Virus record (IMG/VR): IMGVR_UViG_3300023174_000040
Location: 259,268-323,267 of that record
Length of the DNA: 64,000 bases
Reading direction: 5' to 3' (one strand)
Within the stretch, counting starts at the first letter, position 1. Every line of letters begins with the position of its first letter. Below are positions 36,633-48,278 of this stretch, one piece after another. A program made the position numbers and the translations under genes. Under the pieces are notes generated by a model. The model saw only the letters and a list, made by a program, of their open reading frames with translations. It was not told the DNA's origin and searched no databases.

Positions 36633-38966
36633 TCAGGGAGCCACTGTTGTGGTTGTGGGAGCCACTGTTGTTGTTGGGGCCGTCGTGGTGGTTGTCACCG
36701 GTGCAGCAGACACAACCTTTGAAGGATACGAATAAAGCATCTGTGAACAGACCGTTGATGCAGGAATCCATGCTCCCTTCTTTGATGATCCGCTTAGTAC
36801 TCCTGCTTTTAACTTAGTACCTGGATCAATGAACTTCCAAGTCGAACATCCACAAGAATTTAAAGTGGATCCTATTTTTAAATCTTTATTATGCTTCAAA
36901 CATCTTATATTAGTGTTACAAATAGTGCTACCACAAGATTTAGGTTCTTCCGCTACAATAATAAAAGGCTCAGTTATGGTATCTAAGAATTTTTGTGCTA
37001 CATCCCCCATTTCAGATGTCATCATCTGACTTCCGTCGAGTTTAGACATTATTATAGAATATATTTCTTTTCTGTCGCCTATTCCATCAATTGCATGATC
37101 GTCATAATTTGTTGATTCGTCATAAAGATGAGTAATTCCATCGCTGTTGCCTGGAACGATTATTAAATGAGTGGGCGCTACTTCCTCTTGTGCTGCTTCT
37201 ACGGTCTTAGCAAACACAGTGTAATCATTCGATCCAGATATTATTGATAAAACAGCCACTGAATAACTAGTTCCTCCGTCTGCGCCAATATCTCCAGTTA
37301 TACTAAATTGAGTAATGTCTATATTTGTAGCCACTAAAACAAACATACCAGGATACATGGAAGTGAAATATTGACTTCCTTCTCCGAAATAATCTGTTCC
37401 GTCTTCTATTGTGCTGTCGAAATATATTGGTGAATAAATATTCTTTGAAGCACCTCCTGCTGCCCATTGAGGACCAAAAGAAACTTCATTGGGCATCTGG
37501 GTGTGGGTGGAAGGAATGGAAAGATCATAATCTACTTCATCTTCTTTAATATCATCATAGATTTGAGTTAGATTGGTATTAAAGAAATTACCGCCATCAT
37601 ACATATCAAATCCGCCATCATCAATACCGGTTACTAATGGCATATATTCGGATCCAAAGGATCCTGGGGCTCCTGATGAATTTAATTTAACATAGTATCT
37701 TTTTGGTTTAATAAAATATCCACCAATCCATATATCGCCAGAAGATACTTGATATATATCATTTACTGATGGGTAGTATGAATTATTATCTATTTGATTA
37801 CTAGATCGATTATTTCCATAGAAATCATTTGCTCCACCAAAAGAACTGTCTAGTGATCCATCTGAATTAATTTTACAGATGTTATTTCTAACTGATGGTG
37901 TGTCTCCGGGATATCCGAAAGCATTGAAATTACCACCAACAATCATTTTTCCATCATCTAAAAGTTCAATCTTTGTTATATAGGGAGGATAGAAATTTTC
38001 CTCACCATAATATCCAGCTGGGATGTAGTAAGCAATTCCAGGATTTTGTGCTCCTTGTGCGTCTAAACCAAAAGATGTATCTATATAGCCATTTTCATTT
38101 ATTCTACATATGCTATATAGTGTTGTGGTTATTCCAGTATCTGAGATTACACTAAAATTTCCGCCCACTATTATCTTATTATCATCTTGAACCGCAACTG
38201 TTTTCAAGAAACTCTCGTTATTGAAAGCGGGGGGAATAAACGTATCATCTTCAATCCATGTTGAAGTTCCACTATCATATACATATCTGATAATATGTTT
38301 ATCTTCTAAATTATATCCTACTGCAATTAATCTTTCCTCAGAGTCTATTGCAACATCATATACTGCGTCAAAGTTAGAGTTTGCTTCTATCGGGACTTGA
38401 GTTCCATCATCATTTAGGATCATAATTCTAGAAGTGAACCGGCCAGCCACTACCGAAGTATTGTCACTTAAGGCTAGAATTTTATTCACAACTCCATCTA
38501 TTGCGCCATTTAATGTAGAATCAAAACTGGCGTCAAAGACACCATTTGAATCAAATTTGGCAATATAGTGTGAAGTTTGTGTTGTAATAGATCCGTCTAC
38601 AGAATGATTGTAGAACCAACCACCTAATAATATTTTTCCATTAGGTTGGACGGCAACAGTGTAGATAGAATCACTAAATCTTATGGCGGGAAATGTTTCA
38701 TCTCGGACACCGTTTTGGCTTATTTTCAATACCTCTGAGTAGCAACATTCCCAGTTAGCATCTGGTATTCCGTCTACAAACCCTTCTCCGGCCAAAAGCA
38801 TATCTCCATCATCATGCTGGGTAATGCTATTCACTCTACTAGTGTTACATTGACAACTTATGTAGTTTTCAACTTCATCTGTGAAATAATTCAGATCCGG
38901 TGCCATTGCAGTTATTTCTGCGTGATCAGAATTTAGCCTATCTAGTGCGTTCTGTATGTTCAACAT
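36633..38966 (-). CDS. Delta-60 repeat (DUF5122-like) beta-propeller protein with Thr-rich tail
   Basis: TVAVQPNGKILLGGWF, TVAVQDDNKIIVGGNF, LDSSFG; AAAGGAG RBS. Confidence 0.8.
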   Translation of the reverse strand: MLNIQNALDRLNSDHAEITAMAPDLNYFTDEVENYISCQCNTSRVNSITQHDDGDMLLAGEGFVDGIPDANWECCYSEVLKISQNGVRDETFPAIRFSDSIYTVAVQPNGKILLGGWFYNHSVDGSITTQTSHYIAKFDSNGVFDASFDSTLNGAIDGVVNKILALSDNTSVVAGRFTSRIMILNDDGTQVPIEANSNFDAVYDVAIDSEERLIAVGYNLEDKHIIRYVYDSGTSTWIEDDTFIPPAFNNESFLKTVAVQDDNKIIVGGNFSVISDTGITTTLYSICRINENGYIDTSFGLDAQGAQNPGIAYYIPAGYYGEENFYPPYITKIELLDDGKMIVGGNFNAFGYPGDTPSVRNNICKINSDGSLDSSFGGANDFYGNNRSSNQIDNNSYYPSVNDIYQVSSGDIWIGGYFIKPKRYYVKLNSSGAPGSFGSEYMPLVTGIDDGGFDMYDGGNFFNTNLTQIYDDIKEDEVDYDLSIPSTHTQMPNEVSFGPQWAAGGASKNIYSPIYFDSTIEDGTDYFGEGSQYFTSMYPGMFVLVATNIDITQFSITGDIGADGGTSYSVAVLSIISGSNDYTVFAKTVEAAQEEVAPTHLIIVPGNSDGITHLYDESTNYDDHAIDGIGDRKEIYSIIMSKLDGSQMMTSEMGDVAQKFLDTITEPFIIVAEEPKSCGSTICNTNIRCLKHNKDLKIGSTLNSCGCSTWKFIDPGTKLKAGVLSGSSKKGAWIPASTVCSQMLYSYPSKVVSAAPVTTTTTAPTTTVAPTTTTVAP

Positions 38967-39020
38967 ATTGCTCCTTTGTGTATAAATTTATATATTATAC
39001 AATATGTTGAATTTTAAGTT

Positions 39021-39233
39021 TTATTCATCTTTTTTAAGGGTAAGACTTCCCGAAGAAAAGAACATCTCATATATTCTTGAACAACACCTTTGTGGTGTCC
39101 ATTTTAAACTATAGCAATTTTTTATTAATGATTTTATATCTTTATTGATATCTAATACATCGCCCATTGGAGTATATGGATATTCCAAGTTCCAATATTT
39201 TAAAACACTTCTTATGTAAAAATACTCTTCCAC
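39021..39233 (-). CDS. Small hypothetical protein
   Basis: 70-aa ORF with a GTG start. Confidence 0.4.
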   Translation of the reverse strand: MEEYFYIRSVLKYWNLEYPYTPMGDVLDINKDIKSLIKNCYSLKWTPQRCCSRIYEMFFSSGSLTLKKDE

Positions 39234-39254
39234 AAACTAAAATAGTAAAATTAA

Positions 39255-39298
39255 ATAAAAAAAGCCGGTTGAAACCATTTCTAGTTTCAACCGGCTTT
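39255..39298 (-). terminator. Strong intrinsic terminator ending the ncRNA
   Basis: 15-bp perfect stem AAAGCCGGTTGAAAC/GTTTCAACCGGCTTT followed by a U-run on the minus strand. Confidence 0.9.
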
Positions 39299-39299
39299 A

Positions 39300-40110
39300 G
39301 TAGATAGAAGAAGTTTACGATCCACTCATATACAGAGGAATGAATCGTATAAAATAGTCCGTCACTTTAACAGCAGTTCCTATAGGTCTCCTCTACCATT
39401 GGATGTTTTTCATCCACCGTTTTACCTATATGTGACAGTCGTAGTCCGTTCGCCACTCATATTTCTTTTAAAGCTAAACTACCCACAAAATATCACCTGT
39501 TACCAGTGACCCCTTTGGTGGTTGATCTAACAATATCTGGATTTACTCGTACCGAACATTCACCACAACACTCTCATTTGTTTAACGTGTTTGAGCCAAC
39601 ACGTCGTTTCTAGGGTTGTTTTTGCTTTTCAGCACCCAGACTCAATATCACTATTCACCGTCGCCACGGTTGCTCCATAATAAAATAGAGGGGTTGTTAA
39701 AGACACTGCCAGTCTCCTTAACTTATCCCGTGATACTAAGAGGACCGCTACATTTGATTTCAGTGGGATAGTCTTTCTCAAGACTAATGCGTTCCCAAAT
39801 TCCTCAACGTCGTTAGTTCTGACTTCTTGTCTTTAAAAATTATTTCTAATTTTTAAATTTATACAAGTCAAACATCCTCTTACCGAAGCCCACCACAAAG
39901 TTCCGACAAAAAATCCCCCTTGATTTTTTAGTTCAAGGTTTCTTCTTTATCGTATACTACCTCTTTTTGCCTCTCAGCAAACTAGTAATATCCCAACCCT
40001 TCTTTTCACGGATTAGGCTTTTGAGATCGTGGAAGCATTTCTGTTTCCATCGATTGTCCTTGTGGCTTAATTTTTTCGCCAACACATTTCAGTGCTAGCA
40101 AGGACTTTGT
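39300..40110 (-). ncRNA. Large structured non-coding RNA (~800 nt), GOLLD-like candidate
   Basis: No ORF; >12 stems, several GNRA-capped only on the minus strand; own promoter, boxA and terminator; family name not verified. Confidence 0.7.
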
Positions 40111-40117
40111 TTCAAAT

Positions 40118-40129
40118 TGTCAAAGAGCA
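40118..40129 (-). promoter_or_regulatory. boxA antitermination element
   Basis: TGCTCTTTGACA vs rrn boxA TGCTCTTTAACA (11/12). Confidence 0.7.
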
Positions 40130-40173
40130 AGTTTTTTCTTCAACTCATCATTTCCGACGTCGTTGATGGGCTC

Positions 40174-40223
40174 AGTATAGCGACTCCTTGAACCCTCGCA
40201 AGCCCCTATCCAAAAATTTTTTT
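40174..40223 (-). promoter_or_regulatory. Sigma70-type promoter for the ncRNA
   Basis: TTGCGA-16nt-TATACT; A/T-tract upstream; GC-rich GAGCCC discriminator. Confidence 0.7.
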
Positions 40224-40475
40224 GAGCCTATTTTTACGGGTAATTTTGCACTTTTCTTTTTTTTATTTAAAGTTTTTAAAATTTTTTCTTTGGCAAAAGA
40301 AGATAATTTTTTTTTTAAAAAAAATCAGCGGTTCTAGGGCAAATCACAGTCTTCACCGTAGTTGTTAACGTTGAAGCTGGGTCTCCATCGCCGTGGGTTC
40401 TAATTTTAGATTACTGAACATATTTTTCCTTAATTATGTATAGATATATATGTTATTTAATAAAAAGGAATTAAA

Positions 40476-40931
40476 ATGGCAGATATAAAAATATCAGAAT
40501 TACCATTGGGCTCAGCAAATAAAGATGCAGTTGTACCAGCAACAAATGCCGCAGGAACACTAACAGAAAAAATAAAATTAGGAGATATTGCATCTCTCTA
40601 TAAGCCTACAGTGGTAGACCTAGGCGCCGACACATCCATATCAATAAACGCCAGTTCCGGTGACATATTCGACGTAGATGTGGACAACAACGTGACAATA
40701 AGCAACCCGACCTGGACGGGCAGTGCCGTCGACGGAAAAACCATCAAGATAAGAATGAATTGGATAGATGCGGGATATACACTAATATTAGGCAATAAAT
40801 TCGCACTACCAGACGGAGCAACAGATCCTCTTCCGGTTAGCGAAGTCACAGGAAAGACCGATCTGTTTGCGGCCACTTATCATGCCGGCAGAGACAAGTG
40901 GGACGTTGTGGCCTTTATCCCGGGATACTAA
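40476..40931 (+). CDS. Small tail-fibre-related protein
   Basis: MADIKISELP anchor; C-terminal ...WDVVAFIPGY; AAAAGGA RBS. Confidence 0.65.
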   Translation: MADIKISELPLGSANKDAVVPATNAAGTLTEKIKLGDIASLYKPTVVDLGADTSISINASSGDIFDVDVDNNVTISNPTWTGSAVDGKTIKIRMNWIDAGYTLILGNKFALPDGATDPLPVSEVTGKTDLFAATYHAGRDKWDVVAFIPGY

Positions 40932-40938
40932 TTATTTT

Positions 40939-43716
40939 ATGGCAACTCTTTATTATAACAACGCCGTTGGAAACGAAGACTGGTCGACGCTGGGAAACTG
41001 GTGGCTTGATGATTCTTTCTCTACCCCCGCAACCCAGCTTCCAACAAGCAGTGATGATGTGGAGATATACGAATCGCTGACAAGTAATTCAGGAAGCGTG
41101 CCCACTGTCAACAATCTGACAAACAACTCGGAAAACTATAAAGGTCTTCAAACGTCGGTGATTGTTCTTGGAACTGCGACCTTCAATGGTCATAGCTTTG
41201 GTGGGTATGTCGCTGGCCTTCTCCCCACCATAACCGGGAATGCAGTCTTCAACGATTATTCTATGGCAAGCGATTTTCGTATTCATGGAAAAGTCACATT
41301 CAATGACTATTCAGTCGCAGAAGCAAACTTAAATGATGGAGACGACTGGGATCTAGAGGTCGTATTCAATGATTATAGCAGAAAAACGGCGGCTATCCAC
41401 TCGTCGGGCGTTGTCACATTCAATGATTATAGTCGTAATATTAATGGAACTATTAATGGTGGTTTGATTATATTCAATGATAACTCAACCAATGCACAAG
41501 ATTTAACAGCAGAACAATCAACAGTAAATGCGATTTTCAACGACTATTCGTATAACACGGGAACAATATCAGAAAACACAGTTTTCAATGATTATTCAAA
41601 AAATTATGATGGAGTGATATACGTAGACTCAAATAGTGGAGATAATAATAACGACATATCCACACCACAAAGTCCATATAACACAATTCAAAAAGGATTT
41701 GTGACTGCGTATCACTTGGTTCCAAAATTAACAACCGTAGACGGGGTAAAATGTGCTAGTTTCAATGGATCAACAGATTACTTAAATGTTCTTCCTGTGC
41801 AAGGAGCAAACATACAGGAAACTTTTACTGTGGAATTTTGGTTCTATATGAAAAGCGAAACAAGTGGAATCTACACCCTTCTGAGCAACTTGTTTAATCA
41901 AGGATCTAATTCACAAACTCATCCATTATGGAAGGTAAATATCTGCACAAGGACTTATTTGGGCTTTGCAGACGCTCCCGGCGGCAATGTAATTTCTGTT
42001 TCTGGGAAGGTCGTCGCTTCGGATCCCTCAGTTGTAGGAAATACCTTCTCCAACATAGAGTTAAATGAATGGACTCATTTTGCAATGGTTGCAGATGGAG
42101 GAGTGTTTAAGATATACTTAAATGGAAATTTAGAATCAACACATAATTTTACTGGGGGCTATTCTTTTGGAATTGATGAGGGTGATGATCTTAGAAGCGG
42201 ATTAGATATAGGCTACGATTATGATAATGGCGATTTTTTTGACGGATACATAAGCGGAATAAGAATATTCAACGACGCCGCAGTCTACACAAGTACGTTC
42301 ACGCCCAGTTCCCCGGATGATTTTGGATCCACGGTAGGATTACACACAGCCAGCTTTCTGTGGAATTTTGACACTCCCAAGAATTATCTGATAGATGTTA
42401 AGGCCTTGGATCCCCAAGACGATGTCTGGAGCGCAGACGCTGGACCAGGCAGAAATCACGGGGAAGCCACAGAGTGGCCAAACAATATAGCGTTAAGAGG
42501 CAATAATACCAACGCAGATGGATCACCATGGAAAGAAGTAATAATATCAGAAGAAGATCTTCAATATGCCACCGAAGCGGCAGGCGCAAATTTGCTCTCG
42601 GATGGATTCACAACAGATGGAACTTCGAATGGAAAAATTAATTTTATTGGAGCAACCAATCTAGAAAATAAATTTTTACTTAACAATTCGAATACATTCT
42701 CAAATAATAGTTTGCAAGGAGTTTACATTGTAGAGTGGGCCGAAGGGAGCACATCCAAAAAAAGTCGGGCGTATTTGAGTTTTACATCGGGGCCAAATAA
42801 TATAAGCGTGCGTCCTACAAATGACCAATACGGCATCATTAACTTGGCAGGGACATGGAAACTGCCGGCCAAATTTAAACCGGCTTCATCCATGGGCAAT
42901 ATAAATTTCAGTGGACGGGACGCAGTGTGGGATTACGCCGAAGATGTGGCAATAACAACATCAACCAATGGAAGAAAAATAGACATACTAACGTACGGAG
43001 AAGTTATCATAGGCGATATTTCTTCCAACGGGGGCGGGAGGGACGGAGGCGCAGGCCCGGGGAGTGGCGGAGAAGTAAGGATCAACAACGTGATGGCGGA
43101 CAACATCAACGTCAACGGAGGGGACGGAGCTAACTTCGACCCATTCTTTTTGACACAAGGAGGCGGGGGAAATTTCACAGGAATAAATTCAAACGTCAAG
43201 GACATACATTTGAATCCCGGAACAGGGGGCTATGCACAAGATGGAGGAGACATAATCCTCATAGGATCCAAGGCCAAAAACATCTATTCGCACGGAGGAC
43301 TGAGCGCCGACTGCGGCGGCGGCGGAAGTGGCGGCGACCTTTTCATGCTGAACAGCACGGTGGGTGAGGTAGCATGCTACGGCTACCCAGGCGACGGGTG
43401 CGGGTCGGGTGGAAGTAATGGAGGATACGCAACAATAATAAACAGCACGGTGGATTGGCTAAGACTAAACGGAGCGAGCGACGGCACTTCTTACGGGCAA
43501 GGCGGAAATGCGGTGGTCATAGACAGCAGCATCATGCTTGCGGACGTAACCAACTTCGGGCTTCCAAGTGAAATGTGTAATGACATATATGGCCACCCAT
43601 GTGAATCTGAGCAAATTCCGGGCTATGTCGTGGCTCCCAACCATGATTACGACGGCTCAATAAAGACACACACGACAAAGAAGCAGGCAATAAACGGACC
43701 AGGATTCCTCGGATAA
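40939..43716 (+). CDS. Large fibre/adhesin with beta-helix (FNDYS) repeats, LamG domain and Gly-rich region
   Basis: FNDYS repeats; FTVEFW...WTHFAMV...GYISGIRI LamG; likely start 40939. Confidence 0.75.
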   Translation: MATLYYNNAVGNEDWSTLGNWWLDDSFSTPATQLPTSSDDVEIYESLTSNSGSVPTVNNLTNNSENYKGLQTSVIVLGTATFNGHSFGGYVAGLLPTITGNAVFNDYSMASDFRIHGKVTFNDYSVAEANLNDGDDWDLEVVFNDYSRKTAAIHSSGVVTFNDYSRNINGTINGGLIIFNDNSTNAQDLTAEQSTVNAIFNDYSYNTGTISENTVFNDYSKNYDGVIYVDSNSGDNNNDISTPQSPYNTIQKGFVTAYHLVPKLTTVDGVKCASFNGSTDYLNVLPVQGANIQETFTVEFWFYMKSETSGIYTLLSNLFNQGSNSQTHPLWKVNICTRTYLGFADAPGGNVISVSGKVVASDPSVVGNTFSNIELNEWTHFAMVADGGVFKIYLNGNLESTHNFTGGYSFGIDEGDDLRSGLDIGYDYDNGDFFDGYISGIRIFNDAAVYTSTFTPSSPDDFGSTVGLHTASFLWNFDTPKNYLIDVKALDPQDDVWSADAGPGRNHGEATEWPNNIALRGNNTNADGSPWKEVIISEEDLQYATEAAGANLLSDGFTTDGTSNGKINFIGATNLENKFLLNNSNTFSNNSLQGVYIVEWAEGSTSKKSRAYLSFTSGPNNISVRPTNDQYGIINLAGTWKLPAKFKPASSMGNINFSGRDAVWDYAEDVAITTSTNGRKIDILTYGEVIIGDISSNGGGRDGGAGPGSGGEVRINNVMADNINVNGGDGANFDPFFLTQGGGGNFTGINSNVKDIHLNPGTGGYAQDGGDIILIGSKAKNIYSHGGLSADCGGGGSGGDLFMLNSTVGEVACYGYPGDGCGSGGSNGGYATIINSTVDWLRLNGASDGTSYGQGGNAVVIDSSIMLADVTNFGLPSEMCNDIYGHPCESEQIPGYVVAPNHDYDGSIKTHTTKKQAINGPGFLG

Positions 43717-43728
43717 AAAGGACAAAAC

Positions 43729-44001
43729 ATGATCAAATTCGACCCGCCACTAGAAGTGCAAGTAAAAGGAAAGAAAATAAATGTGAGCGAGCTGCCCCTT
43801 GTGGTAATTGACATTCAAAAAACCAAAGTATGCAAGGCGCAATCCTCCCGTTTCTACAAGACATTGACCTTGTGGGAAGGGGCGTCTTACGACGCCATAG
43901 GAAACTACACACAGGAGCAAGCGGAGGCCAGATACCTAGAACTGCTCGGTAGCAAACCAGCAAAAGAACTCGCAAAACTATACGTAGAACCAACCAAATA
44001 A
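43729..44001 (+). CDS. Putative fibre chaperone/accessory protein (paralog of 47988-48278)
   Basis: TLWEGASYDAIGNYTQEQAEARYLELLG. Confidence 0.6.
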   Translation: MIKFDPPLEVQVKGKKINVSELPLVVIDIQKTKVCKAQSSRFYKTLTLWEGASYDAIGNYTQEQAEARYLELLGSKPAKELAKLYVEPTK

Positions 44002-44011
44002 AGTAAAAAAA

Positions 44012-47000
44012 ATGGCAAACCTAGAGCAATACACACCGATATACATAAAATCAAGCGGCAACGACTCCACAGGGGATGGAAGTAGTGGCAATCCATACCT
44101 AACGGCCCAGAAGGCGTTTGAAGTCGCCTATGCGGGAACGGGACTCAAAGTCCTTGATTTCACGGAGGGAAATTTCGGAGGCGTTAATCTAAATGGATTC
44201 AGCGATTGGCCCTCAAGGATTGCTGTTCGTGGGGTAGACAGTCAATCAAGCGTTTTGGGAGGTATAATAGGGGCTTCAAAAAAAATAAGCATAATAAGCG
44301 ACAAAACCGTTGAAATCGGAGAAATAAGTGGCGGATCGACCGTGCTAACGGACTGCAAGGCCGGCAAAGTAAATTCGGCATCAATAAGTTTGATAGACTC
44401 TGATGTGGTGGGATTAAACTCATCAAGAACCTCCTGCTCCGGAAAGGCCAAGGGGCTCGGCGGAGGAAACATACTTGGCCCGAGCAGGACGGAAAAGGTC
44501 TCCTTGCTCCTGCACATGGGTGGCAGCAGGGAAAACATTGCAACATTCACCGATTATTCCATTGACACCAAGAATATAAAAGTCAAGGGAAATACAAGGA
44601 TCATAACTGGAGTTTATACATGTAACGGATCCAGCTGGCCACATTGCGGATATTTCCCGCCGCCGGCTCAGCAGTCCTGCTTCTTCGACGGGAATGGAAG
44701 CTACCTTGAGACGAAGGAAGAAAAGGACTTCGGATTCGGAAGGGGAGACTTCACAATAGAGTCTAAAATATACATCCCATACGACAGCTGGGGCACCACG
44801 GGAACAATATTCAACCTGGGCGGGGGAATAAAACTCAGGACCTATGGCGCAGAAAGCCTGGTGATAGACGGAGAAACATACAACTGGTATCCAGGGGATA
44901 ACATTCCCATCGACCAGGAAGTCCATGTCGCAATGACAAGGAAGGGCGGAGAATTCAACATATTCGTTAACGGAGAAAGGGTCTTCCAGCTCACCGGGGT
45001 CTCGGTGGACCTTGGAAGATCCAACATTCTGAGGATAGGGGCCGGGGAAGAGGACGGAATGGAAGCCTTTTATTTGTACGGATACCTCAGGGAGTTCAGG
45101 GTCGTAAAGGGAAGGGCGGTATACAGTGGTGAATTCCTCCCGCCAACTGAAGCACTTTCCGTGATCGTTGAAGACCACCCATCCTTGGATTCAAGGACGC
45201 TCTACTTCAACAACATCGCCAACGACAACAGTTGGACCAACCTTAATAACTGGTGGTCGGACGAGGCTTGTACCGTGCACAGCAGTTCCTTGCCGGGGGA
45301 GCACGACAAGGTGGTGGTCAGGGGTGCGGCATTCGACGGCATAAACGTAACCGTTCGCAAATTGACCATGTTTGCTGACGGGAATATCCCATCGCACACA
45401 TCATTCAAAAACTCAACCATAAACGCACGTAACGGAATATTTGCAATCACGACAGGTGCGGGATATGTTGAGTCTGGGGGGTCGGGGTTTGCGAGCACAT
45501 GCGCATTGAACGGGAACGTGTTCTTCTTTGAGAGTGATGCAACCCAAGGCACGATGAGCGCACAGGTCGACGGAAACCTTACGGTGGGAGGTTGCGATGT
45601 CGGGGTAAACGTATATGTAAGCGGAAGCGTGATAGTCAAGGGCGACTGTACGAACTTTGGACATGTGGGAAAAAATCTTATAGTTGAACTGGGAGGGTTC
45701 GGAAACGGAAACGGTGCGGTACATCCCACAATTGAAGGCAACGCAATTTTCATTGGCGGCAGGGGACTCGTGGCCACGGCCGATGGGTCGCCCAGCCCTG
45801 GCAATTGGGGGGCGATCAATGGGAATGCCGAATTTTATCTGGGGGCTGTGAACGCAGGAAACGTATATGGAAAAGCATATTTTCACGACAGTTCGAACGG
45901 AGGAACATTGCACAATGGTGCGACCTTCGTAAGCACCGTAGGTGGGGCTGCGATGAATTGGCTTCGTGATGAAAACGGCGAAGGAAGCGGCGCCTTTGGA
46001 CTCATAAACGGAACCACAAAAATATACGGCGCCGGCTACGTTGGGGGCTCCGGAAGTTTCTTTGATGACGTCCACCTGTACGACGGCGTGATCCTAACAA
46101 ATACATTCAAGCCTCCACTCATAGAAGGCAACATATATTGCCACGACAATTCAACGCTGGGAAGCGTAGCATGCCCTAGCGATGTGTATTTCTACGACAA
46201 CTCCCACGGCAACATGAGCTACAGCCCGGGGCTTAATTCAGACTGGCTGCTCGCCACTTACGGAACACCAGACTGGGAGGGATGGAGCGAAGGCCAGTAT
46301 CGTCCGATCAACGGATATGATCCACCCAACCTGAGGTCGGACTTCTACGTTGGTAGCTGCGCCCTCTACGGGAATTCAACCCTTGGAGACTTCCTCGTCC
46401 TTAACGACCTGACGCTCAACGGCGAAAGCGGAATGACCCAGTACAACGTGACTGCCACAACAGGCGGAGATCAAGGTCTACGCCACGGGGTTCTCGAAAG
46501 CGGAACGAGGGTCGAGGGAAGGATAATATGCAACACCACCGGGGACTGCTACCCAGACATACTGAGCCTCACGGTGAACGCAGGCCATACGGGGTACAAG
46601 ACGTTCATAGTGGGTGGATGCTCATATGTAAATGTAAAAATTAATGGAAACATATCAACCATAGAAGGCAGCTCGGTAGATTTGAGCTACATAATAAATC
46701 AATTTGAACTGACGGGTTTTCTAAACATAACCATTCAACCATGTAGTATGGATGGGAATCCTACTTGGGAACGAATAACATCGTTCATTACCTACCAAGC
46801 CCTGAACTTCATCACGGGAGTGGGAAGCCTTAGGGGCATGAACAGAATCGGCACATTAGATCTTATCAACATTCAAAACCCAGAACTGGATGTGTTGAGC
46901 CTGAAGTCGCTTCAAACACTGAATCTGTCGGGGCCAAACATAGCAAGCGTGAACGTAAGCGGACTAAGGAACCTGAGCTACATAGACATTTCAAACAATG

Positions 47001-47296
47001 GCGGGACCCCGTCCCTAGAGTCGGTTTTGGCCTATGGCTTCGGAACATGGGCGGGATACAATGGAAAGGCAAATTTCCGCATAATATACGGTTATGACAA
47101 CAATATGGATATGACTGCGTGGGTGGAATTCTTTGAGTCTCTGGGCGATGGCACCGCCGGCGGAAGTAAGAATTACATCAATGCGTTGACAAGCGGATGC
47201 ACGGTACAAGATGCAATCAACTATATGATAAACAACCACGTCTCCTGGGAGATGGGCGACGTGGGATGGTATATAGAAACGGGGAGCGACTGCTAA
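44012..47296 (+). CDS. Large fibre/adhesin with LamG domain, Gly-rich beta-helix and LRR-like C-terminus
   Basis: GRGDFTIE...HVAMTR...GYLREFRVVKG; LQTLNLSG/LRNLSYIDISNN. Confidence 0.75.
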   Translation: MANLEQYTPIYIKSSGNDSTGDGSSGNPYLTAQKAFEVAYAGTGLKVLDFTEGNFGGVNLNGFSDWPSRIAVRGVDSQSSVLGGIIGASKKISIISDKTVEIGEISGGSTVLTDCKAGKVNSASISLIDSDVVGLNSSRTSCSGKAKGLGGGNILGPSRTEKVSLLLHMGGSRENIATFTDYSIDTKNIKVKGNTRIITGVYTCNGSSWPHCGYFPPPAQQSCFFDGNGSYLETKEEKDFGFGRGDFTIESKIYIPYDSWGTTGTIFNLGGGIKLRTYGAESLVIDGETYNWYPGDNIPIDQEVHVAMTRKGGEFNIFVNGERVFQLTGVSVDLGRSNILRIGAGEEDGMEAFYLYGYLREFRVVKGRAVYSGEFLPPTEALSVIVEDHPSLDSRTLYFNNIANDNSWTNLNNWWSDEACTVHSSSLPGEHDKVVVRGAAFDGINVTVRKLTMFADGNIPSHTSFKNSTINARNGIFAITTGAGYVESGGSGFASTCALNGNVFFFESDATQGTMSAQVDGNLTVGGCDVGVNVYVSGSVIVKGDCTNFGHVGKNLIVELGGFGNGNGAVHPTIEGNAIFIGGRGLVATADGSPSPGNWGAINGNAEFYLGAVNAGNVYGKAYFHDSSNGGTLHNGATFVSTVGGAAMNWLRDENGEGSGAFGLINGTTKIYGAGYVGGSGSFFDDVHLYDGVILTNTFKPPLIEGNIYCHDNSTLGSVACPSDVYFYDNSHGNMSYSPGLNSDWLLATYGTPDWEGWSEGQYRPINGYDPPNLRSDFYVGSCALYGNSTLGDFLVLNDLTLNGESGMTQYNVTATTGGDQGLRHGVLESGTRVEGRIICNTTGDCYPDILSLTVNAGHTGYKTFIVGGCSYVNVKINGNISTIEGSSVDLSYIINQFELTGFLNITIQPCSMDGNPTWERITSFITYQALNFITGVGSLRGMNRIGTLDLINIQNPELDVLSLKSLQTLNLSGPNIASVNVSGLRNLSYIDISNNGGTPSLESVLAYGFGTWAGYNGKANFRIIYGYDNNMDMTAWVEFFESLGDGTAGGSKNYINALTSGCTVQDAINYMINNHVSWEMGDVGWYIETGSDC

Positions 47297-47985
47297 TGAA
47301 CTACTTCAAGACACCAAGCAACAAATACCTCGCCTTTATCCCTAGGTCGGGAAGCACAAGTTTCGCAAGGGCCATAGTAACCCAATTCTATCCGGAACTC
47401 CTTCCGAGGCTCGAGAAAAAACATCCTAACAAAACGGATCCAAAGCCCCAGTTCATCTGCCCGTCCAGCAGCTTTCCTGACGGGGACGCCTATGCCCTCA
47501 TAAGGGACCCGGTGGAAAGGTTCAGGAGCGGATTTTCAAGGGCAAATTTCGGAAGGACCGTGGACGAGGTGATAGAAGACCTTTTCAAGGGCGAATGCAT
47601 AATGAACGTTCACATCGAACCGCAGAGCAACAGGATAAAACACCAAAAGGACATAAAGTGCTTCAAGTTCCCAGAGGGAATAAACGCACTTTCGGAGGCA
47701 CTTGGGATGACGCCACCCGAGCAGGAAAATGAAAGCGAGGACGGCGAGAAGCCGAATCTCACGCAGAAGCAAATAGACAATTTAAGAAAATACTATTTTA
47801 AGGACGTGGAACTGTATGAGAATGCGAGTGTAGAATACACACCAACCACAACAGAACCAACCACAACAGAACCAACCACAACAGAACCAACCACAACAGA
47901 ACCAACCACAACAGAACCAACCACAACAGAACCAACAAACATTAATGATGAAGTGGATATGCCCAGATTATTTAAAGGAAAATAA
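47296..47985 (+). CDS. Sulfotransferase (family-2-like) with a (PTTTE)6 tail
   Basis: FIPRSGSTS 5'-PSB loop; IRDPVERFRSG 3'-PB; HIEPQ; TAATG overlap. Confidence 0.75.
   Translation: MNYFKTPSNKYLAFIPRSGSTSFARAIVTQFYPELLPRLEKKHPNKTDPKPQFICPSSSFPDGDAYALIRDPVERFRSGFSRANFGRTVDEVIEDLFKGECIMNVHIEPQSNRIKHQKDIKCFKFPEGINALSEALGMTPPEQENESEDGEKPNLTQKQIDNLRKYYFKDVELYENASVEYTPTTTEPTTTEPTTTEPTTTEPTTTEPTTTEPTNINDEVDMPRLFKGK
47841..47930 (+). repeat. Perfect 15-nt tandem repeat x6 (ACCAACCACAACAGA)
   Basis: Read directly. Confidence 0.95.
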
Positions 47986-47987
47986 AA

Positions 47988-48278
47988 ATGAAACTACAAA
48001 ATCCAATCACAATAAACATGCCCGACGTAGTGTTAAAAAATGGAAGAAAAAGAAGTATTCCTCCTTTAGTTTTAAAAGAATTAAATATTACAATAATTGA
48101 TAATGAAAATCAAAAAATAGCTAAGGCATCAATACCTCCACTTAAAAAACAAATAGTGTTATGGGAAAATGATTCCTATACTACTGCTGGTGATTATACT
48201 CAAGCACAAGTTGAAGCAAGATTATTGGAAATATTGGGCGATAACCCAACAGTAGTTTTAGAGAATTATTTTAAATAA
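47988..48278 (+). CDS. Putative fibre chaperone/accessory protein (paralog of 43729-44001)
   Basis: VLWENDSYTTAGDYTQAQVEARLLEILG. Confidence 0.6.
   Translation: MKLQNPITINMPDVVLKNGRKRSIPPLVLKELNITIIDNENQKIAKASIPPLKKQIVLWENDSYTTAGDYTQAQVEARLLEILGDNPTVVLENYFK

What the first reader, a model, noticed from the sequence alone, without database searches (positions are those of the whole stretch)
40118..40223. The ncRNA is wired like an rRNA operon
Minus-strand order: A/T UP-like tract, TTGCGA-16-TATACT, GC-rich discriminator GAGCCC, a CATCA/TGATG hairpin (40146-40168, boxB position), then boxA TGCTCTTTGACA. This is the promoter-boxB-boxA layout of rrn leaders. It suggests the phage recruits host sigma70 and NusB/NusE antitermination and folding machinery for this RNA, independent of its late promoters, possibly under stringent control.
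Basis: partly seen in the sequence, partly recalled or inferred. Interest (0 to 1): 0.7.

Follow-up and report, generated by a model that had tools for sequence, protein, structure and literature searches.

The report
rRNA-style promoter and leader on phage RNA
A huge freshwater phage carries a self-contained gene for an abundant, highly folded ~760-nt non-coding RNA whose promoter and 50-nt leader (5' hairpin, then a boxA-like block) are laid out like a bacterial rRNA operon and are conserved in five phage lineages, but the leader is missing from the RNA that accumulates, so its function is still inferred.

Summary
The motifs are at the stated coordinates on the minus strand. I found five related cassettes in other phage contigs (five lineages in all, 57-66% identical between lineages). 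All keep:
- an A/T tract
- TTGnnn, 16-17 nt, TAnAnT
- a GCCC discriminator and +1 A
- a 5'-terminal hairpin with a GNRA loop
- a boxA-like block, invariant .G.UC.UUGACAAUU

The conserved one is UCAAC/GUUGA around CGUCG-GAAA-UGAUG (40166-40140).

Six lake metatranscriptomes cover only this RNA, and no contig includes boxA. Three contigs stop at exactly 40117, the base after boxA. Four end at 39357-39360. These ends bracket a covarying terminal helix, AGUCC/GGACU.

The best reading is a sigma70-type start near 40167, a leader that acts during transcription (probably loading NusB-S10), and trimming of leader and trailer to a ~760-nt stable RNA.

Not shown: the start site, Nus binding, stringent control, and the host.

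The RNA matches no Rfam family. The layout claim is supported and the mechanism is plausible. This is a new variant of a known kind.

The parts
40210..40262 (-). A/T-rich upstream tract. The conserved core CAAAAAAATTTTTGG (40224-40210, about -57 to -43) is UP-element-like.
   Evidence: The core A-run/T-run is conserved in all five lineages. L007 carries a 39-nt deletion further upstream (40282-40320) that leaves the core intact.
40196..40201 (-). -35-like hexamer TTGCGA
   Evidence: Homologs have TTGCGG, TTGTAA, TTGCAA and TTGTGT at the same place.
40174..40179 (-). -10-like hexamer TATACT, after a 16-nt spacer
   Evidence: Homologs have TATACT, TACAAT and TAGACT. T1, A2, A4 and T6 are invariant. 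The spacer is 16 nt, 17 in L118.
40168..40173 (-). GC-rich discriminator GAGCCC; GCCC is invariant
   Evidence: 4 of 6 columns invariant. For comparison, E. coli rrnH P1 has GCGCCTCC.
40167..40167 (-). Predicted transcription start (A), 7 nt after the -10. Not observed directly.
   Evidence: Inferred from promoter geometry and from the transcribed-type covariation that starts at +2. No RNA contig reaches it, and no RNA run was listed for 40105-40215.
40140..40166 (-). 5'-terminal leader hairpin in the boxB position: outer stem UCAAC/GUUGA, inner stem CGUCG/UGAUG, GAAA tetraloop
   Evidence: Each lineage folds the same way. Compensatory changes: inner C-G to U-A (L118); G.U to G-C (L007, L128, L118); outer A-U to G-C (L133). 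The loop is always GNRA (GAAA, or GAGA in L136).
40130..40139 (-). A-rich linker, variable in length and sequence
   Evidence: 0 of 10 columns invariant; 5-7 nt shorter in L118, L133 and L136.
40115..40129 (-). boxA-like block TGCTCTTTGACA plus ATT
   Evidence: Unique exact match in the genome. Variants are UGUUCUUUGACA (L128), UGAUCAUUGACA (L118, L133) and CGAUCUUUGACA (L136). 12 of 15 columns are invariant. 16 of 18 bases match the E. coli rrnH TGCTCTTTAACAATTTAT. No conserved pairing partner was found.
40117..40117 (-). 5' end of the RNA that accumulates, most likely a processing site
   Evidence: Whole contigs from three metatranscriptome runs stop at exactly this base (X16, X18, X19). X20 stops at 40107. 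X15 and X17 run into adapter at 40084 and 40089.
39357..40117 (-). Mature structured RNA of about 760 nt, in no Rfam family
   Evidence: RNA-only coverage at depth 10-155 with silent flanks. Fold z-score -10.8. 261 consensus pairs, 113 with compensatory pair types, 92% canonical against about 40% in slid controls. No Rfam match for any homolog.
40102..40106 (-). 5' strand (AGUCC) of the terminal closing helix
   Evidence: Pairs with GGACU at 39360-39356. L136 has GAUCC/GGAUC, which is two compensatory pairs.
39356..39360 (-). 3' strand (GGACU) of the closing helix, and the main 3' end of the accumulated RNA
   Evidence: Contigs end at 39360 (three runs, adapter joined there in X17) and at 39357 (one run).
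39299..39355 (-). 3' trailer with a conserved hairpin. It is kept in a minority of transcripts.
   Evidence: The X15 and X18 contigs run on to 39292 and 39307. The hairpin covaries.
39251..39298 (-). Intrinsic terminator: 17-bp stem, loop, T-run
   Evidence: Five consecutive stem pairs are exchanged in L118 while the loop is kept. It is also present in L133.

Best explanation
The region is the control end of a self-contained stable-RNA gene carried by a huge T4-like freshwater phage.

Proposed mechanism (steps marked shown or inferred):
1. Host RNA polymerase with its housekeeping sigma factor starts at about A40167. The promoter has an upstream A/T tract, a TTGCGA/TATACT pair with a short 16-nt spacer, and a GC-rich discriminator (inferred).
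2. The first 50 nt form a leader. A GNRA-capped hairpin starts at +2, followed by an A-rich linker and a single-stranded boxA-like block (anatomy shown by conservation).
3. I think the block most likely loads the host NusB-S10 pair onto the elongating polymerase, as in rRNA operons (inferred).
4. That would make the polymerase resistant to termination across about 0.9 kb of untranslated RNA. It would also keep the 5' end tethered until the distant 3' strand of the terminal helix, AGUCC/GGACU about 750 nt apart, is made (inferred).
5. Transcription stops at the intrinsic terminator at 39298-39261 (predicted, and conserved).
6. The leader is cut off right after boxA, at 40117, and most of the trailer is removed at about 39357. 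This leaves a ~760-nt RNA that accumulates far above the neighbouring phage genes (RNA ends shown; cleavage inferred).

Shown here: the anatomy, its conservation, the RNA's abundance and its ends.
Inferred: the start site, Nus binding, and any growth-rate or stringent control.
For: - All motifs are present.
- The cassette sits in the longest ORF-free gap of the genome. It is bounded by a strong terminator.
- It occurs in different gene contexts in L128 and L118. It is absent from the same intergenic site in kin phage L060 and from other kin records.
- Five lineages at 57-66% identity keep the A/T tract, -35, spacer, -10, GCCC, +1 A, hairpin and boxA-like block in register.
- The hairpin shows compensatory changes, so the leader is selected as RNA.
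- boxA plus 3 nt is 12 of 15 invariant although it is absent from the mature RNA.
- Its invariant C4 and U6 are the positions whose mutation kills boxA function in E. coli. Its variable position 2 spans what real rrn boxAs use.
- The E. coli rrnH leader fetched for comparison shows the same UP, -35, 16-nt spacer, -10 and GC-discriminator build, and TGCTCTTTAACAATTTAT.
- B. subtilis rrn transcripts likewise begin with a small 5' hairpin followed at once by boxA.
- Six RNA runs cover only 39292-40117.
- The RNA ends bracket a covarying closing helix.
- The adapter orientation in X15 and X17 fits a minus-strand RNA if the libraries are dUTP-stranded.
Against: - No RNA contig contains the leader, so the start at 40167 is unproven.
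- The best-conserved part of the block is its 3' half plus AAUU (UUGACAAUU), next to the cut. The 5' half GCUCUUU, which matters most for NusB-S10, is less conserved.
- Two lineages have A at position 5 (GAUCAUU), which fits no boxA consensus I could cite.
- No GU-rich boxC is conserved.
- The RNA is G-rich and C-poor with no C>G stretch, so it is a poor Rho substrate and may not need antitermination.
- The A/T tract lies about 3 nt further from the -35 than the consensus UP distal subsite.
- The host is unknown, and its sigma specificity and its own boxA could not be compared.
- The closing helix is only 5 bp, and its covariation comes from one lineage.
Confidence: 0.55

Rival explanations
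1. The boxA-like block is mainly a processing or maturation signal, not a Nus-factor site. It would be a single-stranded recognition sequence for the endonuclease, or another protein, that cuts after ...UUGACA to create the mature 5' end. The match to rrn boxA would then be partly coincidental.
For: - The stable 5' end falls at exactly the 3' edge of the block in three runs.
- The invariant core is UUGACAAUU, which straddles the cut. The 5' half varies at two positions.
- The cut is followed by AUU, which fits the U at +2 preference of RNase E (my own knowledge of the RN/WUU rule).
- The RNA has no obvious Rho loading region.
Against: - A cleavage signal does not explain why the variable positions stay within what real boxAs use while C4 and U6 stay fixed.
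- It does not explain why the block comes with an rrn-style promoter and 5' hairpin.
- The two roles are not exclusive.
Confidence: 0.25
2. The hairpin and block form a nut-like site for a phage-encoded antiterminator. An N-like protein would bind the GNRA-capped hairpin and work with or without host Nus factors.
For: The hairpin is a short stem with an invariant GNRA loop, conserved more strictly than an rrn boxB would need to be. Lambda boxB folds like a GNRA loop and binds N (my own knowledge). The phage record is only 64% complete and most of its proteins are unannotated.
Against: The order is hairpin then boxA, as in rrn leaders, not boxA then boxB as in lambda nut sites. No candidate protein was identified. 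A 5'-terminal hairpin is also explained by 5'-end protection and by the B. subtilis rrn precedent.
Confidence: 0.1
3. Transcription starts at 40117, downstream of the boxA-like block. The upstream hexamers, hairpin and block would then be DNA-level or unrelated elements.
For: Three independent RNA contigs begin at exactly 40117 and none extends upstream. No RNA run was listed for the leader.
Against: - No -10 element is possible: the would-be -11 base is an invariant G and the hexamers read TGCTCT, TGTTCT, TGATCA and CGATCT.
- The region that would hold a -35 has a 5-7 nt length difference between lineages.
- The phage's own promoter motif is absent there.
- The upstream hairpin covaries as RNA does.
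- A well-placed sigma70-type promoter is conserved 50 nt upstream.
Confidence: 0.07

Closest known systems
E. coli rrn operon P1 promoter and leader (boxB-boxA-boxC, Nus-factor antitermination complex)
   Same: A/T tract upstream of the -35. A 16-nt spacer, GC-rich discriminator and +1 A. A hairpin followed by boxA. 16 of 18 bases of TGCTCTTTAACAATTTAT are shared. The leader is removed from the mature RNA, and the ends of the mature RNA pair with each other.
   Different: The product is not rRNA (no Rfam SSU or LSU match). There is one promoter, not two. No conserved boxC. Position 8 is G. The cut is at the 3' edge of boxA, not in a long leader-trailer RNase III stem. The gene is carried by a phage.
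Bacillus subtilis rrn leaders (5'-terminal hairpin followed by boxA-like AUGAUCUUUGAAA, which binds BsNusB; PMC13753749)
   Same: A small hairpin at the very 5' end, followed closely by a boxA with G at position 8. A at position 2 is as in L118, L133 and L136 (GAUCUUUGA in L136).
   Different: An A-rich linker of 3-10 nt separates hairpin and block. Two lineages have A at position 5. Binding to any NusB is untested.
boxA elements outside rRNA: suhB 5' UTR and CRISPR-array leaders (PMC5725501; cited in PMC13753749)
   Same: A boxA placed at the start of a transcript that is not an rRNA. In CRISPR arrays the transcript is long and untranslated and needs protection from premature termination.
   Different: Those are chromosomal genes of gamma-proteobacteria. 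Here the boxA heads a phage-encoded large structured RNA and comes with an rrn-type promoter and hairpin.
Lambdoid phage nut sites (boxA-spacer-boxB with N protein)
   Same: A phage uses a boxA and a GNRA-like hairpin in a transcript leader.
   Different: The order is reversed (hairpin first). The target is a single non-coding RNA gene that ends at its own terminator, not read-through of downstream operons. No N-like protein was found.
Large ornate RNAs often carried by phages (GOLLD, ROOL; PMC12286853)
   Same: Several hundred nucleotides, many covarying helices, phage-borne, found in lake metagenomes, very abundant.
   Different: No covariance-model match to GOLLD, ROOL, OLE or any other Rfam family, even at E up to 10.

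Membership tests
rrn-type Nus-factor antitermination leader (boxB-boxA) | boxA sequence fitting the consensus (GYUCUUUAANA in gamma-proteobacteria; UGAUCUUUGAAA in Bacillus), with C4 and U6 intact | tested here: met
   The window has GCUCUUUGACA, 10 of 11 to the gamma-proteobacterial consensus, with G8 as in Bacillus. C4 and U6 are invariant in five lineages. L118 and L133 deviate at position 5.
rrn-type Nus-factor antitermination leader (boxB-boxA) | boxA lies in the transcribed leader, downstream of the start site | tested here: inconclusive
   Promoter geometry and RNA-type covariation of the hairpin place it at +39 to +50. No RNA contig contains it, and the stable 5' end is at 40117.
rrn-type Nus-factor antitermination leader (boxB-boxA) | Hairpin upstream of boxA (the boxB position) | tested here: met
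A GNRA-capped hairpin at +2 to +28 in all lineages, with compensatory changes.
rrn-type Nus-factor antitermination leader (boxB-boxA) | Conservation of boxA upstream of homologs | tested here: met
   12 of 15 columns invariant across five lineages at 57-66% overall identity; top 2.5% of windows.
rrn-type Nus-factor antitermination leader (boxB-boxA) | GU-rich boxC after boxA | tested here: not met
   UGUGUUGG at 40087-40080 is one arm of a covarying hairpin and is not conserved in L118, L133 or L136. To my knowledge boxC is dispensable for antitermination in E. coli.
rrn-type Nus-factor antitermination leader (boxB-boxA) | Binding of NusB-S10 and resistance to termination | not testable with these tools
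   Needs binding assays or a reporter. The complex predictor gives no verdict for RNA partners. The phage record encodes no NusB of its own.
rrn P1-type sigma70 promoter (UP element, short spacer, GC-rich discriminator) | -35 and -10 hexamers with a 16-17 nt spacer, conserved in place | tested here: met
   TTGCGA-16-TATACT, with TTG and T1, A2, A4, T6 kept in all lineages.
rrn P1-type sigma70 promoter (UP element, short spacer, GC-rich discriminator) | A/T-rich UP element at about -60 to -40 | tested here: inconclusive
   A conserved A-run/T-run at -57 to -43. Function is untested.
rrn P1-type sigma70 promoter (UP element, short spacer, GC-rich discriminator) | GC-rich discriminator, and control by ppGpp/DksA | tested here: inconclusive
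   GCCC is invariant before +1. Regulation cannot be tested here.
Ribosomal RNA gene | Match to SSU, LSU or 5S covariance models | tested here: not met
   No rRNA hit in the window or in any homolog, even at E up to 10.
Lambda-type nut site | boxA upstream of boxB, with an N-type antiterminator | tested here: not met
   The order is hairpin then boxA. No N-like protein was sought beyond the Pfam and PHROG scans of neighbouring genes.
Known large structured RNA families (GOLLD, ROOL, OLE, HEARO and others in Rfam 15) | Covariance-model match | tested here: not met
   Searches gave only sub-threshold hits to unrelated small-RNA models, the best ones on the terminator hairpin.

The most novel reading that the evidence does not exclude
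The phage borrows the host's ribosome-biogenesis transcription machinery, the boxA-loaded Nus complex that acts as an RNA chaperone, to make and fold a non-ribosomal giant RNA. Tethering of the 5' end to the polymerase would be what lets the 750-nt-distant terminal helix close. A bolder version is that heavy transcription of this boxA leader also drains NusB, S10 and SuhB from host rrn operons during infection.
Probability: 0.15. Interest if true: 0.85.

Novelty: new variant of a known kind. Interest (0 to 1): 0.6.

Why it matters
boxA-driven Nus complexes are known for rRNA, for lambdoid nut sites and for a few chromosomal targets such as suhB and CRISPR arrays. A phage-encoded large structured RNA headed by a full rrn-style promoter, hairpin and boxA module would be a new use of that machinery.

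It would give a testable link between the chaperone role of the antitermination complex and the folding of a non-ribosomal RNA. It would also give a practical handle for expressing and studying a new, highly abundant class of huge-phage RNA, since the promoter, leader, ends and terminator are now mapped.

The block is as conserved as the best parts of the RNA yet absent from the mature molecule. Whatever its partner is, it must act during synthesis or maturation.

Tried and rejected
- **Known families.** Rfam at gathering score and at E up to 10, on the window and all homologs, found no family. An rRNA origin is rejected; the AGTGGCGAACGG resemblance to 16S is a short isolated match.
- **GenBank phages.** blastn of the region found no match.
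- **Synteny.** Relatives of the neighbouring 151-aa protein and of the major capsid protein do not carry the RNA next to them.
- **Pattern scans.** The metagenome and genome scans with a 19-mer gave only the known contigs plus random hits.
- **Relatives.** `genome search` cannot draw relatives for a virus record.
- **HP2.** This was a pairing of GUUGAAGA with the 3' half of boxA, predicted by RNAalifold. I rejected it because the same 5' arm forms the covarying outer stem of the 5' hairpin in L133, and boxA has no consistent partner.
- **Leader-trailer duplex.** A long RNase III-type duplex was sought with RNAduplex. The best duplexes fall at different places in different lineages, so it is not conserved.
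- **Start at 40117.** A Bacteroidota-type (TAnnTTTG) or sigma70 promoter for a start at 40117 does not fit.
- **TTGACA as a -35.** TTGACA inside boxA would need a start near 40088, but no -10 follows it and contigs reach 40117.
- **Genome-wide motifs.** Canonical sigma70, T4-late and Bacteroidota motifs are not enriched upstream of genes. The phage has its own motif instead.
- **Phage-encoded factors.** No NusB, sigma70 region 2 or T7-like RNA polymerase was found in the 64%-complete record. The RNA polymerase control search rang nowhere, so that result is uninformative.
- **Literature.** No paper describes this RNA, and none mentions LR756511.
- **Host.** It was not identified. Shine-Dalgarno motifs peak at -12 to -9 in about 37% of genes. 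The phage tmRNA tag is GTVNYAMAA. Neither settles it.

Full report
**What is in the sequence.**
- An A/T tract, with core CAAAAAAATTTTTGG at 40224-40210.
- TTGCGA at 40201-40196, a 16-nt spacer, and TATACT at 40179-40174.
- GAGCCC at 40173-40168.
- CATCA at 40168-40164 and TGATG at 40150-40146.
- TGCTCTTTGACA at 40129-40118.

The consensus scan finds the same hexamer pair. The number of promoter-like sites in the region (4) is below the shuffle mean (6.3), so the hexamers alone prove nothing. The exact boxA string is unique in the 323-kb genome. Composition predicts about 0.12 copies per genome and about 1e-5 per 60-nt leader. All five one-mismatch copies lie inside long ORFs.

**Setting.** The window is the last 64 kb of a 323,267-bp virus record from a lake metagenome, estimated 64% complete. 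It is a tailed phage with a T4-type major head protein, a large terminase and a portal. Its nearest GenBank relative is a 595-kb uncultured phage. The motifs sit at the upstream end of the longest ORF-free stretch of the genome, window 38967-40475. A strong intrinsic terminator lies on the same strand at 39298-39261. The 916 nt between the predicted start and the terminator fold far better than shuffles (z = -10.8).

**Expression.** Each of six lake metatranscriptome runs yields exactly one contig on this region, about 98% identical (the L007 variant). The contigs cover only 39292-40117 at word depths of 10-155. The flanking genes have no coverage, whereas DNA runs cover everything evenly.
- The upstream ends are 40117 in three runs (X16, X18, X19), 40107 in one, and 40089 and 40084 in two where the contig runs into an Illumina adapter.
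- The downstream ends are 39360 in three runs (with adapter in X17), 39357, 39307 and 39292.
- No contig contains boxA or any base up to 40167.
- A search for RNA runs holding 40105-40215 listed none.
- In X15 and X17 the read-2 adapter sits at the high-coordinate end, and in X17 the read-1 adapter at the low-coordinate end. This fits a minus-strand RNA if the libraries are dUTP-stranded.

So the RNA is real and very abundant. Its stable 5' end is the base immediately after the boxA-like block.

**Homologs.** Sequence searches of GenBank phages and of neighbours' relatives found nothing beyond a near-identical contig, L007.
- In kin phage L060 the two flanking genes lie about 100 bp apart with no RNA gene between them.
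- Pattern scans seeded from the RNA body, a covariance model of one domain (R1), and a final pattern scan recovered L128, L118, L133 and L136.
- L128 is 91-93% identical to the window. L118, L133 and L136 are 57-66% identical to it.
- Together with the window and L007 this makes six sequences in five lineages.
- In L128 the flanking genes are rearranged. In L118 they are unrelated to this genome.
- Homology starts in the A/T tract and ends after the terminator T-run.

The unit therefore behaves as a self-contained cassette. A consensus fold has 261 pairs, 113 of them with compensatory pair types. It is 92% canonical, against 36-44% when partners are slid by 1-3 columns. No member matches any Rfam family.

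**Promoter conservation.**
- The -35 reads TTGCGA, TTGCGG, TTGTAA, TTGCAA and TTGTGT.
- The spacer is 16 nt, 17 in L118.
- The -10 reads TATACT (three lineages), TACAAT and TAGACT, with T1, A2, A4 and T6 invariant.
- GCCC lies before an invariant +1 A.
- An A-run/T-run lies at about -57 to -43.

The E. coli rrnH control region, fetched for comparison, has the same build: an A/T tract, TTGTCT, 16 nt, TATAAT, GCGCCTCC, then A. The phage's own promoter-like motif, GTTTCCYTYYGGTACGGT, has 69 copies, nearly all on one strand between 33 and 184 kb. It is absent from the cassette. The RNA gene is therefore wired differently from most phage genes.

**Leader anatomy, revised.**
- The CATCA/TGATG pairing is not conserved. 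40150 T>C in L007 and L128 removes its closing pair, and the other lineages cannot form it.
- Every lineage instead forms a hairpin that starts at +2. It has an outer stem UCAAC/GUUGA, an inner stem CGUCG/UGAUG and a GAAA loop.
- Compensatory changes support it. The inner C-G becomes U-A in L118. Two G.U pairs become G-C. The outer stem becomes UCAGCC/GGCUGA in L133 and UCAA/UUGA in L136. The loop is always GNRA (GAGA in L136).
- An RNAalifold suggestion that the 3' half of boxA pairs with GUUGAAGA is rejected. That arm belongs to the covarying outer stem, and boxA has no consistent partner.

The leader is therefore a 5' hairpin, a variable A-rich linker, then a single-stranded conserved block.

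**The boxA-like block.** The variants are:
- UGCUCUUUGACA (window, L007)
- UGUUCUUUGACA (L128)
- UGAUCAUUGACA (L118, L133)
- CGAUCUUUGACA (L136)

All are followed by AUU. The invariant pattern is .G.UC.UUGACAAUU, with 12 of 15 columns invariant. Only 22 of 893 windows of 15 nt in the transcription unit do as well.

In the numbering of Baniulyte et al. (consensus GYTCTTTAANA), C4T/T6C and C4A abolish function (PMC5725501), and C4 and U6 never vary here. Position 2 is C, U or A. The B. subtilis rrn boxA is AUGAUCUUUGAAA and binds its NusB. Those rrn transcripts also begin with a small 5' hairpin immediately before boxA (PMC13753749). The window shares 16 of 18 bases with E. coli TGCTCTTTAACAATTTAT.

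Against a pure Nus reading:
- Position 5 is A in two lineages.
- The most conserved part is the 3' half next to the cut.
- No boxC is conserved.
- The RNA is G-rich with no C>G stretch for Rho to load on.

**Ends and maturation.** A start at 40117 has no usable promoter. The base at the would-be -11 is an invariant G, the -35 region varies in length by 5-7 nt, and the phage motif is absent. The upstream hairpin covaries as transcribed RNA does. I therefore read 40117 as a processing site.

A scan for pairings between the 5' and 3' ends that hold in all sequences found AGUCC (40106-40102) pairing with GGACU (39360-39356). In L136 these are GAUCC and GGAUC, which is two compensatory pairs. The contig ends at 40117/40107 and 39360/39357 bracket this helix. 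The mature RNA is then about 760 nt, closed by a terminal helix. The 50-nt leader and most of the ~100-nt trailer are removed, and two runs retain the trailer. The helix is short and its covariation rests on one lineage, so I hold it with moderate confidence.

**Mechanism.**
- Shown: the anatomy, its conservation, the abundance, the ends.
- Inferred: a housekeeping-sigma start at about 40167, the boxA block loading NusB-S10 and so a termination-resistant, chaperone-like elongation complex, endonucleolytic removal of leader and trailer, and possible growth-rate or stringent control from the short spacer and GC-rich discriminator.

One appeal of this model is that the block lies 12 nt upstream of the 5' strand of a helix whose partner emerges about 750 nt later. 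That is the situation in which the rrn complex is thought to help (PMC10250234 and PMC8632103, listed). The main rival is that the block is chiefly a maturation signal, and the two are compatible. Lesser rivals are a nut-like site for a phage antiterminator and a true start at 40117.

**Comparison and novelty.** In layout the cassette works like an rrn promoter and leader, but it is not an rRNA operon. It is not a lambda nut site either, because the element order is reversed. boxA outside rRNA is known for suhB and CRISPR arrays. A phage-borne large RNA with the whole rrn-style module appears not to have been described. I class it as a new variant of a known kind. The RNA it drives is an uncatalogued class.

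**Limits.** Only assembled contigs, not reads, were available for the RNA runs. The host is unknown. The scans of bacterial genomes were exhausted before host rrn leaders could be compared. The family has only five lineages. No binding or activity can be computed here.

Noticed in passing
window 39357-40117 (minus strand); homologs L118:4405-5335, L128:3062-3985, L133:1290-2205 (minus), L136:1331-2255: The RNA is a large, heavily covarying structured RNA of about 760 nt when mature. It matches no Rfam family and far outweighs neighbouring phage genes in lake metatranscriptomes. It is known so far from only five lineages of huge freshwater phages.
   Followed up: partly
G000:C1:33629-184274 (outside the window): A 20-nt motif, GTTTCCYTYYGGTACGGT(T/A), occurs 69 times, 68 of them on the + strand, mostly just upstream of genes and tRNAs. 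It looks like the phage's own early or middle promoter for a phage-directed polymerase specificity.
   Followed up: partly
G000:C1:113483-113842 (outside the window): ARAGORN calls a phage-encoded tmRNA with tag GTVNYAMAA next to a tRNA-Leu. It also calls six further tRNAs, including one with an odd anticodon loop at 118976-119043.
   Followed up: no
window 40310-40420: Between the cassette and the 151-aa gene (40476-40931, + strand) lies a GC-richer segment (GAACCCACGGCGATGGAGACCC...GAACCGCTGA) followed by T8A10. It is conserved in L007. It may be a structured 5' UTR or a bidirectional terminator. No Rfam match.
   Followed up: no
window 40459-40502: In two DNA metagenomes, short contigs at 4-10 times the local depth match only the first ~44 nt of the 151-aa gene. 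This stretch is therefore shared by many other genomes or copies. Relatives of this protein occur in at least 31 viral contigs.
   Followed up: no
window 40282-40320: A 39-nt A/T-rich stretch upstream of the cassette is deleted in L007 and in a contig of DNA run X13. The conserved A-run/T-run nearer the promoter is untouched.
   Followed up: partly
window 36633-38966 (minus strand) and G000:C1:193-201 kb: The 777-aa beta-propeller protein (DUF5122 repeats) downstream of the RNA has several paralogs elsewhere in the genome. In L128 the paralogs flank the RNA cassette in a different order.
   Followed up: no
window 43000-48000: A GC-rich island (0.47-0.53 against 0.36 for the genome) covers the 1094-aa virion structural gene at 44012-47296.
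   Followed up: no
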